DNA from: Cyanophora paradoxa CCMP329
Taxonomy: Eukaryota; Plantae; Glaucophyta
DNA: 64,000 nt
Reading direction: 5' to 3'
NCBI GenBank assembly: GCA_004431415.1
Contig: QPMI01000685.1
Span: 17,935 to 81,934, forward strand
The position numbers were made by a program, and so were the translations under genes. The notes under the pieces were generated by a model. The model had not been told where the DNA came from and did no database searches. It saw only the letters and a list, made by a program, of their open reading frames with translations. The stretch's first letter is position 1, and the number at the start of each line of letters is the position of its first letter. This document shows, piece by piece, positions 4,823-55,758 of this stretch.

Positions 4823-5560
4823 CTAGAGAGTCTCGATCTCGTCGAAGGACTGCTCGGCGGAGACCTGCTCGCGGTGGGCCGTGGGGCGCGCGGGGTGAGC
4901 GCTCAAGATCAGGCGGGGGCGGAGGGGGCGGCGCACCTCGAAGACCTCCTGGTCGTCGGCCTCGGCGCGCCCGCAGCCGCAGAACGAGAGCTCCTCCTGC
5001 GCGCCCCGCCGGCCGCCGCTCAGATTGGGCGGGGCCTGCCGGGCAGGATCGATATCGAAGTATCGTCGGACCTGGTTGGACTCGGAGAAGGTGACGCGGC
5101 CGGTGATCTCAACCGCCTCCTCATCCTCCTCCTCCTCCGGGCTCTGATCCTCCTCCTCCTCCTCTCCCTCGTCCGCGACGGTCTCGTCCTCCTCCTCCTC
5201 CTCGTCGGACTTCAGCTTATCCAGAGCCGCCTGCGCCTTCTGCGCTCGCCCAAGGACACGGGTAAGATGTCTTTCTGCGTTCCGTGTGCAGAGGAGCCGA
5301 CGGAGATCGAAATCCGCGGCCGAATAATCGCAGGATACTATGGAAAGTGCCAGTGCTTTTTCGGGCCGGGTCGCGGGCGGGCGACCCCGGCCCCCCGGAA
5401 CAGAGCGCAGCGCGTAGTCACCGTTGCGAGATTGTCGAGAGACTGGGCCGCGGCAGAAACTTGATCGAGGAACTGCGCGGGCGGCGGTTGGCCTCCGAAG
5501 ATCATCGGATAAGACTCGGAGGTACGGTTGCACAAAGCTGCCCGGCGTGGGCAGCCTCAA
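4823..5560 (-). CDS. Hypothetical acidic protein with RVxF motif; start codon not resolved
   Basis: Long open frame with a Glu/Asp-rich tract (DEEEEEDETVADEGEEEEED) followed by RVTFS; coding-like GC3 bias. Confidence 0.5.
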   Translation of the reverse strand: MRLPTPGSFVQPYLRVLSDDLRRPTAARAVPRSSFCRGPVSRQSRNGDYALRSVPGGRGRPPATRPEKALALSIVSCDYSAADFDLRRLLCTRNAERHLTRVLGRAQKAQAALDKLKSDEEEEEDETVADEGEEEEEDQSPEEEEDEEAVEITGRVTFSESNQVRRYFDIDPARQAPPNLSGGRRGAQEELSFCGCGRAEADDQEVFEVRRPLRPRLILSAHPARPTAHREQVSAEQSFDEIETL

Positions 5561-51876: not shown

Positions 51877-52438
51877 ATCTGTCCGACCGCGCGCGGCGAG
51901 CTGGCCGCGCACCTCGGTGAGTGCCGCGGCTTTGAAGCGCTGATTTCGCCCACCCCGCCGCATGCGCAGTGCCTCCGCCCGGTGCCGGTGTCCCGCCGCC
52001 GCCGCCGCCGCCGCCGCCGCCTCGCTTCGCCTGAGCGGCCCGACTTGCTCGACGGTTTTCTGTGGTTCAGTCCTATAGCTAGTCTCACCAGCGTTAACTC
52101 ACTTCGTTGGCCGTCGGACGTCTTAAATGTAAATATTTCACGCACATCGAGATCCGGAGCGCGAGCTCGCTCGGCCGAATGGGCGTTGAAATTAGTGGGA
52201 TGCCTGGCGTGGTGCGGAGGAAGCTTCGGAATGGCGCGACATGCACGCGAATGAACTTGCACGGCGGTGGGCCCGGGGGCGGATGGGGTGGCAGCGCGAA
52301 ATCAAGGGGACTGCGGACCGCCTCTTCATCGATTCGCCCTCGAGCACAATCGAGTCATAGAGCTAGCCTAGCACGGGGGTCGCGAGGGGGACTAGCCTCG
52401 GGGCGAGCTAGGGCTGGGTCGGGGGGGCCAGGGGCCGC

Positions 52439-54502
52439 TCAGTAGGGCTCGCCGGTGACGAGGGGGCGGATGATGCCCATGTTGGGGACCGCCACCGTCC
52501 GGTACGCCTGCTCCAAAAACCCTCAGACGGGAGAAACGCGCGGGGCGGGGGCGGGGCGGGGGCGGGGGCGGGCGAGGGGCGCGCCTTGACGTGGGCGCAG
52601 GCGGCGTCGGGGTCCATCTTGTGCTGCCGCCCCTCGCCCGTGAGCCGGCCGGGGCGAGACGAGGGACGGGGGGCCGGGGGGCGGACCTTCCAGCAGAGGT
52701 AGGCGACGACGACGGCGGGGGCGCGGCCCATCCCCGCCGTGCAGTGCACGTACGCCTGCGCCGCGGGCGGGGCGCGTGAGGCGGCGGCGGGCGGCGGGCG
52801 ACGGGCCGCGGGGAGCTGCGGCGGGGGCGGGGGCGGGGGCGGCACCTTGTGGCCCTGGGCGAGGAGCGTGTCCCACTCCTTCACGGCCCCCTTCAGGCGC
52901 CGCCGCAGGTCCTCCGGGTTGAAGTCGCTGCCCCGAAAATGTAAGGCGGGGGGAGGGGGGGTGGGAGGGGTACGGGGCGGCGCACTAGATGGGGTAGTGG
53001 ACGAGCTTGATGCCGATCCTGCGGTAGTGCTCCTGCGGGGCGCGTGAGGGGGGCGGGAGCGGGCGGGGCCAAGGGGGCGGGGGCGGCGCGCCTGGAGTTC
53101 GGGCCAGGGGATCTGGCGCTGATGGATGTCCTCCATGGTCTGCACGTTGAGGACGGCCGTCACCCCCGCCTCCTTCATCGCATCCAGGTCCTCCTTCCTC
53201 TGCCCGCCCCGCCCCTCAGCGGCACGCGGCGCCGGGGCCGGGGCGGGGCGTGGCGGGGCGGGGAGGACCTGCGGGTAGGGCCCGATGAACATGTTGTCCG
53301 GGACGTAGTCGAACTTCATCCCTGCGCGGGCGCGCTCAGAGGCGGGGGGAGAGGGCGCGCGGCGGGCTCGCACCGGCGACGAAGTTGACGTCGTGGGTGT
53401 CGTAGACGCCGTTGACCATCTGCGCCTCCACCAGGTTCGTCCGCTGCCGCCCGGGGATCAGCCGAGGGCGCGCGGGGCGCCGGGTCCAGGCGGGGCGGGC
53501 GTACCCGGTTCGGCTCGCGCTCCCACATCTCCGCCTTCTTCGTCCGCTCGTTCAGGATCGAGTACCTGGGCGCGCCTCCGTCTGAGGCGGGGGCACGGGA
53601 AGCGGGGGCGTGGGCGAGGGGGCACCGGTACTGGATGTCGCCGTACTTGCCGCGGGGCACGAGGAGCTCGAGCTCCCAGTTGCGCTCGCGCGCCCCCGTG
53701 CGCAGCGTCCGCGGCGGGCCCAGGCTCAGCCCCGCCGTCCCCTTCGTCCACCTGCCCCGGGGTGAGCGGGGGCGAGCGGAGGGCGGGGCGGGCAGGGGGT
53801 GCAGCGCGCCGCCCGATCTCGTCCATGTCGCCGGTGACGCAGACGCGCTGGCCGTCGGGGACGACGTAGTAGATGGAGAAGCGGACGCGCAGGTGGTCGA
53901 ACGCGTCCGTCACCTCCACCCGCTCCCCGCCCTCCGTCGCCGCGAAGTCAACCTGCGCGCGCCCCGCCGCCCTCGGCCCCGGCGCGCAGGCGGCGGAGCA
54001 GGAAGCGCGGGGCGGCGCACGATGCGGTTCGGGCCGGCCTCCCAGCGCGGCGGCTGCCTCCCGTGGAGGGCGACGTACTGCAAGGGGCGCCGCGGTCGGC
54101 GGGGGCGGGGCGGGGAGGGCGGGTGGGTACGGGCGGCAGGCACCTTGTACTCGAAGGGGGGCACGCTGGGCGGGAGGCGCAGCTCGGCCGTCCAGACGTG
54201 GTCCTTGCCCCACTTCATTTTCTGCGCCCCCGAGGGTCACTTGGGCGGGTCCTGGGGCGACGGCTGCGGCGGGGCCACGGCGTACGAAAGCGCGGGAGAG
54301 CTCCCAGCCCCCGAACTCCGGGAGCGACCCGCAGATCACGAGAAAATCACCAGGATACGTCACATACTTGATGGAGAAGTGCACGGTCCTGTAGCCTGCG
54401 GGGCGGGCGTCAGCGGCGGCGCGGGCGGCGTGAGGGGTGCGGTGGCGCGCCATCCTGCCCGTGCGTGCCGTTGGACACGCCGTTATGGCCCGGGTGCGCC
54501 AT
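52439..54502 (-). CDS. Laforin-like glucan phosphatase (CBM20-CBM20-dual-specificity phosphatase)
   Basis: CBM20 motifs (ICGSLPEFGGWE..WTAEL..FEYKYV..WEAGPNR; VTGDMDEIGRW..WEREPNR) and a DSP domain with GVTAVLNVQT, YPI.DF and YVHCTAGMGRAP. No transit peptide. Confidence 0.9.
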
Positions 54503-54538
54503 CGCGGGCTGATCGCTGGCGCGGGGCCGGCCGGGGGC

Positions 54539-55128
54539 TTAGCTGGAGGCCTCCGGGCCCTTGAAGACGTAGTTGAACTCGCCGCTGCGCCGCGCGTCAG
54601 ACGGGGATGCCGGGATCGGCCGTGTGCTGCCCGCACCTGTCGAGGAGCTCCTGGATCTCGTCCGCGCCCTGCGGGGATGGTCGGACGGGAGAGGGAGGGG
54701 CGCCCGCGTACAGCAGCGAGGGCCCTCGATGCGCACGCCGATGTATCTGCCGTTAACGAAGACTTGAGGGAGGTCGCTCTTGCCTGCGCAGCGTGGACGT
54801 TTGGCGGGCGCGATTGTGCGGTCGGGACCCGAAAGGTCGGCTGAAGAAAGGAGCGTACCGCTCAGTCTGATCATATCCGCGCGGCGCGCGGGCTCGTATG
54901 ACAGGTTGACTTCCTCGTGCTCAACCTTGCACATAAGCAGCGTGTCCTTGACCTTCCTGCAGTCCGCCCGAACCTGCTCCGACGGTTACGCGGCGATCGG
55001 AAGCACGCGAGATGCTCCCCGCCACGGCCCTCCCCGCAACAGTCGAGGTTCGACCCAGGGGGCGTGACGGCGCGTCAACACACCTTGGCAGTCGAGGCTT
55101 CGCTGACCAGGTAGAGGACCACGGACAT
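54539..55128 (-). CDS. Glutaredoxin-like (GRX-like/SH3BGR-related) small protein lacking CxxC
   Basis: Spliced MSVVLYLVSEASTAK|VRADCRKVKDTLLMCKVEHEEVNLSYEPARRADMIRLS|GKSDLPQVFVNGRYIG|GADEIQELLDS|GEFNYVFKGPEASS*, containing the Grx motif PQVFVNGRYIGG. Confidence 0.85.
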
Positions 55129-55758
55129 GAATAGCGGGCCGATCGCCGGCCGTATCGAGCTGCCTGCTGACTGGGTACGCGGACAGACCTTCGCGCATCG
55201 TACCCCACCCATGCAGCTGACATCGATGATCGATGCTACCGATATGAGGCCAACGTTAACATCATGGCATCGTCCCGGCCGCCGTGCCGCCGCGGCCGGG
55301 CCGCGCCGCAGGGCGCGCTGCGCGGCCTGCGCACCCGGGAAGCCTCGCAAAATTAAAGTGCGCGCGGCCCGCGCGCGCGCGCGCACGTGCACCCCGGATC
55401 CCGGAAGCGCTATATATAGCTATCATATCGATATCGATATCGCTATATCGGTGCGACGTACGTATACGTAGCGGCTGGACGTTAGCTGCTGCTGCTGGGT
55501 GCAGCTGCTGGCTGCTGGCTGGACGTTAAATGCATGTACATACGTATTTAACGTACACGGAACTCAGTGATCATACTATCATATCAACGCCGGGGGAGTC
55601 GGGGGGCTGGGGTCGGGGCGTCGGAGAGCGGGGGGTCGGGCCGGGGGGCCGGGGTCGAGGGACGGCGCCGAGCTGGTCTCAAATCTATCTCTCATGCGCG
55701 GGGCAAGGCTTCTCATGCACGGGGCAAGGAAATGAGAGGAGTGGAGACCGTTAAACGC

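What the first reader, a model, noticed from the sequence alone, without database searches (positions are those of the whole stretch)
52439..55128. Glutaredoxin-like ORF and glucan phosphatase only 36 nt apart, same strand and same frame: bicistronic or switchable fusion
Seen: the Grx-like stop TAA (54541-54539) is followed by 36 nt (APGRPRASDQPA, no stop) and then the phosphatase ATG (54502). That leaves no room for a poly(A) site plus promoter. Established: glucan phosphatases use an oxidation-sensitive catalytic Cys (plant SEX4 is redox-regulated), and polycistronic nuclear loci are known in green algae. Inference: a co-transcribed redox partner and starch phosphatase unit, expressed by leaky scanning, reinitiation or readthrough.
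Basis: partly seen in the sequence, partly recalled or inferred. Interest (0 to 1): 0.85.

Follow-up and report, generated by a model that had tools for sequence, protein, structure and literature searches.

The report
Conserved two-protein mRNA in Cyanophora
In the glaucophyte alga Cyanophora paradoxa a small glutaredoxin-fold protein and a starch (glucan) phosphatase are encoded 36 bases apart on what assembled RNA shows as one spliced messenger, and the same pair in the same order sits on transcripts of a second organism, so this is most likely a conserved two-protein mRNA of the kind known from green and red algae.

Summary
The genome is Cyanophora paradoxa, a glaucophyte and not a green alga; both ORFs are already public gene models (g23168, g23167).

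Spliced contigs from three RNA studies cross the junction. In two of them one contig covers both ORFs with all 18 introns removed. The TAA and the ATG share one internal 134-nt exon.

The closest relative of both proteins (55% and 51% identity) has the same layout on transcript contigs from two MMETSP samples, with a 9-nt spacer, again in frame. 82 other loci with phosphatase relatives lack the pair.

ORF1 is an SH3BGR-like glutaredoxin fold without the catalytic cysteine (RADC in place of CPYC), so "redox partner" is not supported. Readthrough or fusion has no direct support. ORF2 is a laforin-like phosphatase (two CBM20 domains plus a DSP domain).

Best reading: a conserved bicistronic mRNA, with ORF2 reached by leaky scanning past a weak ORF1 AUG; that mechanism is inferred. 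A single molecule has not been shown, because only contigs were available. The scan earlier noted three other candidate bicistrons elsewhere in this genome.

The parts
52312..55196 (-). Span of the mature spliced mRNA as seen in assembled RNA contigs, covering both ORFs
   Evidence: X1 contig of 1679 nt spans 52313-55196 and X4 contig of 1656 nt spans 52317-55177, both with all introns removed. X7 contig 12 spans at least 54144-54971 across the junction.
54539..55128 (-). ORF1 coding region, 94 aa, SH3BGR-like glutaredoxin fold (public model tig00021719_g23168.t1 = P0013). Five exons: 55128-55084, 54973-54859, 54783-54737, 54668-54637, 54584-54539
   Evidence: Exact mapping of P0013 with GT-AG introns. 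Pfam Glutaredoxin 6e-11. AlphaFold model with pLDDT 92 has a Grx fold, with best TM-scores to SH3BGRL3.
55126..55128 (-). ORF1 start codon in a weak context, ctattcATGt (T at -3, T at +4)
   Evidence: The ortholog in L003 has ttgtgcATGt, also T at -3 and T at +4.
54959..54970 (-). Codons 17-20, RADC, at the position of the CPYC active site of glutaredoxins; the nucleophilic Cys is missing
   Evidence: Alignment to E. coli Grx3 (1FOV). The family alignment A1 shows the remaining Cys is not conserved.
54539..54541 (-). ORF1 stop codon TAA
   Evidence: No differing letters in the DNA-like or RNA contigs.
54503..54538 (-). Inter-ORF spacer of 36 nt, in frame, with no stop and no ATG
54500..54502 (-). 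ORF2 start codon in the context cccgcgATGg (G at -3, G at +4)
   Evidence: The public model P0001 starts here. Homologs have similarly short N-termini before the first CBM20.
54451..54584 (-). Internal exon of 134 nt holding the end of ORF1, the TAA, the spacer, the ORF2 ATG and the first 52 nt of ORF2; spliced on both sides
   Evidence: Joints 54584/54637 and 54393/54449 (movable by up to 3) in X1, X4 and X7; exact boundaries.
54396..54450 (-). GC-AG intron of 55 nt, phase 1, that puts ATG 54502 in frame with the first CBM20 exon
   Evidence: Joint (ends GC..GC, movable by 3) resolved to GCGCGC...CAG by exact protein mapping.
52439..54502 (-). ORF2 coding region, 387 aa in 15 exons, laforin-like glucan phosphatase (public model tig00021719_g23167.t1 = P0001)
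   Evidence: Exact mapping. Pfam CBM_20 in two stretches (3e-25) and DSPc (3.5e-17). PDB sequence hits: LSF2 2e-22, LSF1 4.5e-17, SEX4 2.5e-14, laforin 3e-10.
53932..54387 (-). First CBM20 starch-binding domain (residues 21-106, introns included in the span)
53505..53892 (-). Second CBM20-like domain (residues about 120-209)
   Evidence: Second CBM_20 stretch; conserved block in A2; coordinates.
52463..53389 (-). Dual-specificity phosphatase domain (residues 228-380)
52723..52746 (-). Catalytic loop HCTAGMGR (Cys334 at 52743-52741)
   Evidence: Invariant in alignment A2; coordinates.
52312..52438 (-). 3' untranslated region, about 127 nt; RNA contigs from three studies end at 52312-52317
   Evidence: table 8

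Best explanation
This is a conserved bicistronic nuclear mRNA of the glaucophyte Cyanophora paradoxa. One transcript starts near 55196 and ends near 52312 (minus strand), loses 18 short introns, and carries two complete cistrons. ORF1 is a 94-aa SH3BGR-like glutaredoxin-fold protein without the catalytic cysteine. ORF2 begins 36 nt after the ORF1 TAA and is a 387-aa laforin-like glucan phosphatase (CBM20-CBM20-DSP), which presumably acts on the cytosolic starch of this alga. The two are made as separate proteins. ORF2 is most likely reached by leaky scanning: 40S subunits pass the ORF1 AUG, which sits in a poor context, and two in-frame internal AUGs, then start at the ORF2 AUG, which sits in a good context. 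This would fix co-expression and roughly set the ratio of the two proteins. Shown here: the layout, the splicing, contig-level continuity across the junction, conservation of the pair in a second organism, and the family assignments. Inferred: that a single molecule carries both ORFs, the leaky-scanning mechanism, translation of both ORFs, and any functional link between the two proteins.
For: 1. Spliced contigs cover both ORFs in two independent studies (X1 1679 nt, X4 1656 nt), and a third study bridges the junction (X7 contig 12).
2. The TAA, the spacer and the ATG lie in one internal 134-nt exon spliced on both sides. This leaves at most 82 nt for a transcription start inside the exon and no obvious room for a poly(A) site.
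3. The nearest relatives of both proteins (55% and 51% identity) lie in the same order on intron-free transcript contigs from two samples (L003, L085). They are separated by 9 nt, and MMETSP called them as two ORFs on one transcript.
4. Both ORFs are complete stand-alone proteins. ORF1 relatives are proteins of about 95 aa, and ORF2 homologs start equally close to the first CBM20.
5. The ORF1 AUG has T at -3 and T at +4 in both species, and the ORF2 AUG has G at +4 in both (plus G at -3 in Cyanophora). The 68-nt 5' leader and the spacer hold no AUG, and there is no out-of-frame AUG before ORF2 in Cyanophora.
6. These are the features reported for green-algal bicistrons, where leaky scanning was shown in vivo (PMC7896298, PMC11892635).
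7. Spacers of 9 and 36 nt are short for classical reinitiation after a 94-100-codon ORF (established knowledge on reinitiation).
Against: Only assembled contigs were available, and the tool itself warns that a contig across two genes does not prove a single transcript. No transcription-start, poly(A), long-read, ribosome-profiling or proteomic data were seen. AUG depletion is not significant: zero out-of-frame AUGs has P = 0.62 under synonymous resampling in this GC-rich gene. Two internal in-frame AUGs (Met29, Met49), the second with G at -3, would capture some scanning ribosomes. The Kozak preference of Cyanophora itself was not measured. The organism behind L003/L085 is not named, so the depth of the conservation is unknown.
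Confidence: 0.68

Rival explanations
1. There are two overlapping monocistronic mRNAs. ORF2 has its own transcription start inside the ORF1 gene (in the junction exon or upstream), ORF1 messages are polyadenylated within the start of ORF2, and the short-read assembler merged them. Alternatively, such monocistronic forms coexist with a minor bicistronic form.
For: Contigs cannot show starts, ends or single molecules (caveats). Internal monocistronic transcripts accompany polycistrons in Cryptosporidium (PMC11761812).
Against: The junction lies in an internal exon spliced on both sides in the same contigs from three studies. Among the loose ends listed (84 more are not shown), none lies between the TAA and the ORF2 ATG. 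The second organism has only 9 nt between the ORFs, again on single contigs from two samples. Keeping such tight adjacency at about 50% protein divergence is hard to explain if the two genes are expressed independently.
Confidence: 0.2
2. The pair is a switchable fusion. The TAA is read through, or an alternative splice removes it, to give a Grx-fold-linker-CBM20-CBM20-DSP protein beside or instead of the separate proteins.
For: The ORFs are in the same frame with stop-free spacers in both species (36 nt and 9 nt), a joint chance of about 1/9. The spacer and the ORF2 N-terminus look like a linker, rich in P, G, S and N. In Cyanophora a hypothetical 60-nt GT-AG intron (donor after ...AACTAC, acceptor ...GATCAG before CCCGCGATG) would remove the TAA in frame; this is read from the sequence and is untested.
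Against: TAA is generally the tightest stop (general knowledge), and no known readthrough context is shared by the two species (TAA-G versus TAA-C). No joint for the alternative intron appears in the contigs, and L003 has no GT donor at that place. Skipping the junction exon shifts the frame (ORF1 exon 4 ends in phase 2, while the acceptor at 54395 needs phase 1). No fused homolog was found among 84 phosphatase loci or the ten longest of the top Grx-fold hits. In green algae about one third of pairs are in frame by chance (PMC7896298).
Confidence: 0.05
3. The mRNA is bicistronic, but ORF2 is translated by termination-reinitiation (post-termination 40S subunits restart at the nearby AUG) and not by leaky scanning.
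For: The spacers are very short (9 and 36 nt) with no competing AUG. Three AUGs in the ORF1 frame must otherwise be bypassed. The green-algal study could not fully exclude some reinitiation (PMC11892635).
Against: Reinitiation efficiency falls steeply with upstream ORF length, and 94-100 codons is long. Short spacers give little time to regain the ternary complex (established knowledge). The weak context of the ORF1 AUG in both species is what leaky scanning predicts and is not needed for reinitiation.
Confidence: 0.1

Closest known systems
Exclusively polycistronic nuclear mRNAs of green algae (Gallaher et al. 2021, PMC7896298; Duenas et al. 2025, PMC11892635); also reported for red algae (Cho et al. 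2023, as cited in PMC11761812)
   Same: Two complete ORFs with their own start and stop on one spliced mRNA. A small upstream ORF (285 nt here, against green-algal medians of 444-600 nt). A short inter-ORF spacer. A short 5' leader. A weak AUG context at ORF1. No AUG in the spacer. Conservation of the pair across species.
   Different: The lineage is a glaucophyte, and I found no report of nuclear bicistrons there. The spacers of 36 nt and 9 nt are far below the green-algal medians of 212-260 nt. AUG depletion could not be shown statistically. Single-molecule, promoter, poly(A) and proteomic evidence is missing here.
Laforin and laforin-like glucan phosphatases of red algae and protists (one to three CBM20 domains N-terminal to a DSP domain)
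   Same: CBM20 domains N-terminal to a DSP domain with the loop HCTAGMGR. The host stores starch in the cytosol. A putative laforin homolog of Cyanophora is already mentioned in the literature (PMC13666283).
   Different: By sequence the DSP domain is nearer to plant LSF2, LSF1 and SEX4 (E 2e-22 to 2.5e-14) than to human laforin (3e-10). There is no CBM48 as in SEX4. Activity, position specificity and oligomeric state are untested.
SH3BGR / SH3BGRL3 family (glutaredoxin fold without the CxxC active site)
   Same: About 95 aa with a Grx fold (pLDDT 92). The best TM-scores are to SH3BGRL3 (1j0f 0.85, 1t1v 0.83). It has the extended loop ...SEASTAK...C in place of CPYC. 15 of 18 relatives, and the ortholog P0163, match PF04908.
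   Different: P0013 itself scores below the PF04908 cut-off (12.7 against 21 bits) and scores better on Glutaredoxin. It keeps the cis-Pro (LPQ) and GG-x-D-E motifs of glutathione-binding glutaredoxins. Its function is unknown.
Redox-regulated plant SEX4 with thioredoxin or glutaredoxin partners
   Same: A Cys-based DSP phosphatase sits next to a thioredoxin-superfamily protein.
   Different: ORF1 lacks the nucleophilic Cys, so it cannot act as a classical disulfide reductase. No interaction was predicted (no verdict), and no redox data exist for this enzyme.

Membership tests
Nuclear polycistronic (bicistronic) mRNA, green-algal type | One mature mRNA molecule spans both ORFs | tested here: inconclusive
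   Spliced contigs span both ORFs in two studies and bridge the junction in a third. Transcript contigs of a second organism do the same. Contigs are not single molecules.
Nuclear polycistronic (bicistronic) mRNA, green-algal type | Each ORF has its own start and stop, separated by a short inter-ORF spacer, and no splicing joins them | tested here: met
   TAA 54541-54539, a 36-nt spacer and ATG 54502 are all kept in the spliced contigs. L003 has TAA, 9 nt, then ATG.
Nuclear polycistronic (bicistronic) mRNA, green-algal type | Weak Kozak-like context at the ORF1 AUG | tested here: met
   T at -3 and T at +4 in both species. This is judged by the general eukaryotic rule; the species' own consensus was not measured.
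Nuclear polycistronic (bicistronic) mRNA, green-algal type | Fewer AUGs than expected upstream of ORF2 | tested here: inconclusive
   Two AUGs after the ORF1 start against 3.15 expected. Zero out-of-frame AUGs has P = 0.62 under synonymous resampling. L003 has 4 against 5.1 expected.
Nuclear polycistronic (bicistronic) mRNA, green-algal type | A single promoter and a single poly(A) site; both proteins made | not testable with these tools
   Only contigs were served. No raw reads, cap data or proteomics were available.
Glucan phosphatase (laforin-like) | DSP domain with the Cx5R catalytic loop of the glucan-phosphatase type (C-x-A-G-x-G-R) and a catalytic Asp | tested here: met
   HCTAGMGRAP (Cys334) and YDF (Asp303) are invariant in A2. 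The best PDB sequence hits are LSF2, LSF1, SEX4 and laforin. The loop signature itself is recalled from the literature.
Glucan phosphatase (laforin-like) | CBM20 carbohydrate-binding module N-terminal to the DSP domain | tested here: met
   Pfam CBM_20 at 3.3e-25 in two stretches, N-terminal to DSPc.
Glucan phosphatase (laforin-like) | Removes phosphate from starch or glycogen | not testable with these tools
   Needs an enzyme assay.
Glutaredoxin (active thiol-disulfide oxidoreductase) | CxxC or CGFS active site with the N-terminal nucleophilic Cys | tested here: not met
   RADC aligns to CPYC of E. coli Grx3. The remaining Cys is variable in the family.
Glutaredoxin (active thiol-disulfide oxidoreductase) | Glutaredoxin fold | tested here: met
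   Pfam PF00462 at 6e-11. Model pLDDT 92, with Foldseek hits to many glutaredoxins.
SH3BGR family | Match to PF04908 above its cut-off | tested here: inconclusive
   P0013 scores 12.7 bits against a cut-off of 21. The ortholog P0163 scores 27 bits, and 15 of 18 relatives match. The best TM-scores are to SH3BGRL3.

The most novel reading that the evidence does not exclude
The same-frame, stop-free junction kept in two species may not be chance. On this reading, a fraction of ribosomes reads through the TAA, or the pair descends from a fusion gene and still works as one. That would make a glutaredoxin-fold-laforin fusion beside the two separate proteins, so one mRNA would yield three products and the small protein would act as a detachable regulatory domain of a starch phosphatase.
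Probability: 0.06. Interest if true: 0.8.

Novelty: new member of a known kind. Interest (0 to 1): 0.55.

Why it matters
Two-protein nuclear mRNAs are documented in green algae and reported in red algae. If they also exist in glaucophytes, the third lineage of primary-plastid algae, then either the trait is old in Archaeplastida or it arises easily in compact, GC-rich algal genomes.

This locus is a good test case. The pair is conserved in a second organism, both proteins belong to recognisable families, and the junction is tiny. A handful of long reads or one RT-PCR could settle it.

It also matters for annotation. Gene finders and expression atlases treat the two as independent genes.

For starch biology, it flags an uncharacterised small Grx-fold protein whose dosage is tied to the laforin-like phosphatase of a cytosolic-starch alga. 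The 'redox partner' idea should be dropped unless biochemistry says otherwise.

Tried and rejected
- Complex prediction on P0001 + P0013 gave no verdict (score 0.00). This is no evidence for or against binding.
- The single-sequence AlphaFold model of ORF1 was poor (pLDDT 51). It was replaced by the alignment-based model.
- The search for homologous proteins with the intron-containing ORF1 piece and with P0013 found only P0013 itself. The exhaustive HMMER search was needed to reach relatives.
- More distant phosphatase relatives have no Grx-like ORF within the flanks: L001, L002 and 80 further loci, 35 of them with at least 400 nt upstream. The pairing is therefore lineage-restricted.
- None of the ten longest of the top multi-domain Grx hits carries a CBM20 or DSP domain.
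- AUG depletion as a leaky-scanning signature is not significant.
- Skipping the junction exon as a route to a fusion fails on intron phase (2 against 1).
- The alternative 60-nt intron that would remove the TAA has no joint in the contigs and no counterpart in L003.
- The organism behind L003/L085 could not be named. Two MMETSP samples with identical sequence would fit Gloeochaete wittrockiana, but that is from memory and was not verified.
- The Cyanophora-specific Kozak consensus was not derived, because no set of mapped start codons was at hand.
Full report
**Observation.**
- ORF1 starts at ATG 55128-55126 and ends at TAA 54541-54539.
- The next 36 nt (54538-54503) translate to APGRPRASDQPA, with no stop and no ATG.
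- ORF2 starts at ATG 54502-54500 and ends at TGA 52441-52439.
- The window is very GC-rich here, 65-78%. A stop-free 12-codon spacer is therefore expected, and an in-frame spacing has a one-in-three chance.

**Organism and gene models.** A search with the long intron-spanning open frame of the phosphatase returned a 387-aa public protein, P0001. It maps exactly onto 15 exons between 54502 and 52439. A search with the ORF1 piece returned a 94-aa public protein, P0013. It maps exactly onto five exons between 55128 and 54539. Both are EukProt entries of Cyanophora paradoxa, tig00021719_g23167.t1 and g23168.t1. The genome is therefore a glaucophyte, not a green alga, and the two ORFs are already annotated as neighbouring genes.

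On method: I did not send any joined spliced sequence to a search tool. The two public models that the searches returned served as references. Exons were concatenated only inside local scripts, to verify translation and to count ATGs.

**RNA evidence.** Runs X1, X4 and X7 come from three studies and gave contigs with every intron removed, so they derive from mature RNA. X15 gave unspliced contigs, so it is DNA-like.
- In X1 one 1679-nt contig runs from 52313 to 55196.
- In X4 one 1656-nt contig runs from 52317 to 55177. Both cover both ORFs.
- In X7 a 689-nt contig covers at least 54144-54971 across the junction. Its break lies inside ORF2, not between the ORFs.
- No run shows a differing letter, so the TAA is real in both DNA and RNA.
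- The TAA, the spacer and the ORF2 ATG lie together in one internal exon (54584-54451) that is spliced on both sides.
- The intron after that exon (54450-54396) is a GC-AG intron of phase 1. It puts ATG 54502 in frame with the first CBM20 exon.
- Contig ends suggest a 5' leader of about 50-70 nt and a 3' UTR of about 127 nt.

The limit of this evidence is stated by the tool itself: contigs cannot prove a single molecule, a start or an end.

**Conservation.** An exhaustive HMMER search with P0013 found as its closest relative P0020, a 64-aa call that is part of the 100-aa protein P0163.
- P0163 lies on a 1692-nt intron-free transcript contig, L003, from JGI sample 3300017186.
- Nine nt after its TAA there follows a 408-aa CBM20-CBM20-DSP protein.
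- A second sample, 3300017104, holds the same arrangement on L085.
- The MMETSP re-assembly calls both ORFs on one transcript, Transcript_45014.
- ORF1 is 55% identical and ORF2 is 51% identical to the Cyanophora proteins. Both are the best matches found anywhere.
- The two ORFs are again in the same frame.
- Of 84 loci holding phosphatase relatives, only L003 and L085 carry a Grx-like ORF nearby, although 35 of the others have at least 400 nt upstream.

The pairing is therefore specific to this lineage and has been kept through about 50% protein divergence. The tools did not name the organism behind L003. It is a cultured MMETSP strain and probably another glaucophyte; that is inference.

**What the proteins are.**

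ORF2:
- It has two CBM20 domains and a DSP domain with the loop HCTAGMGRAP.
- By sequence the DSP is closest to plant LSF2, LSF1 and SEX4, and less close to human laforin.
- The architecture, CBM20 N-terminal to DSP, is that of laforin-like enzymes of red algae and protists.
- A putative laforin homolog of Cyanophora is already mentioned in the literature (PMC13666283).

ORF1:
- It is a glutaredoxin fold (Pfam 6e-11; model pLDDT 92).
- Where glutaredoxins have CPYC it has RADC, so the nucleophilic cysteine is missing. The remaining cysteine varies among relatives.
- 15 of 18 relatives and the L003 ortholog match the SH3BGR family. The best TM-scores are to SH3BGRL3.

**How ORF2 is probably translated.**
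- On the mature mRNA only three AUGs precede the ORF2 AUG, and all three are in the ORF1 frame.
- These are the ORF1 start (ctattcATGt, T at -3 and T at +4), Met29 (C at -3, T at +4) and Met49 (G at -3, A at +4).
- The ORF2 AUG has G at -3 and G at +4.
- In L003 the ORF1 AUG again has T at -3 and T at +4, and the ORF2 AUG has G at +4. The two out-of-frame AUGs there open ORFs of only 3 and 6 codons.
- These features match green-algal bicistrons, where leaky scanning was demonstrated in vivo (PMC7896298, PMC11892635).
- AUG depletion itself is not significant here, because the gene is so GC-rich.
- Classical reinitiation is less likely after a 94-codon ORF with a 9-36 nt spacer. That rests on established knowledge, not on a test made here.

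**Fusion or readthrough.**
- The shared frame in both species has a joint chance of about 1/9. It is noted but proves nothing.
- The stop is TAA in both species, and no readthrough context is shared.
- Skipping the junction exon breaks the frame.
- A hypothetical 60-nt GT-AG intron that would remove the TAA in frame has no joint in the contigs and no counterpart in L003.
- No fused homolog was found.

**Novelty.**
- I found no paper on nuclear bicistrons in Cyanophora or glaucophytes.
- The phenomenon is known in green algae and reported in red algae.
- Earlier notes of this scan list three other candidate bicistrons elsewhere in this genome. I did not test those.
- This locus adds conservation across organisms, which is stronger evidence than layout alone.

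**Verdict.** This is a real feature and is best read as a conserved bicistronic mRNA, a new member of a known kind.

Noticed in passing
L004:5001-5600 (GCA_964019345.2, CAXHTA020000019.1): Another member of the same small SH3BGR-like family (P0019, 97 aa) ends at TGA 5455-5457. An ATG follows 2 nt later (5460), in frame with the called start (5526) of a 587-aa JmjC/Cupin_8 gene on the same strand. This is a candidate bicistron with the same kind of upstream cistron but a different downstream partner, in an unnamed eukaryote.
   Followed up: partly
window 52508-54450 (introns of ORF2): Four of the 14 ORF2 introns are GC-AG with the same donor GCGCGC (54450, 53809, 53091, 52584). All 18 introns of the two ORFs are only 52-110 nt long. 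This is a high share of non-GT donors.
   Followed up: partly
window 55184-55451: Upstream of the main contig end (55196) lies an AT-rich palindromic stretch (gatatcgatatcgatatgatagctatatatagc, about 55443-55410) with a TATA-like run at 55418-55411. Low-depth RNA contigs (about 5-10% of the main depth) cover 55184-55451 in X1 and X4, and a loose end sits at 55385. This may be a minor upstream start with several upstream AUGs, or unrelated RNA.
   Followed up: no
window 54100 (inside the intron 54143-54078): In X1 and X4, contigs match from 54100 upwards and then run on into unlike sequence (loose end TGTCTTTCCTCTGATGTAGCTCGCGTCTCA). This is unexplained. It could be a chimeric contig, an allele or a rare isoform that retains part of the intron.
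   Followed up: no
P0010, P0011; loci L005-L084: CBM20-DSP phosphatases of this type also occur in records labelled bacterial (for example an Egibacteraceae MAG) and in many metagenome contigs at 31-48% identity. The family is much wider than algae and apicomplexans.
   Followed up: no
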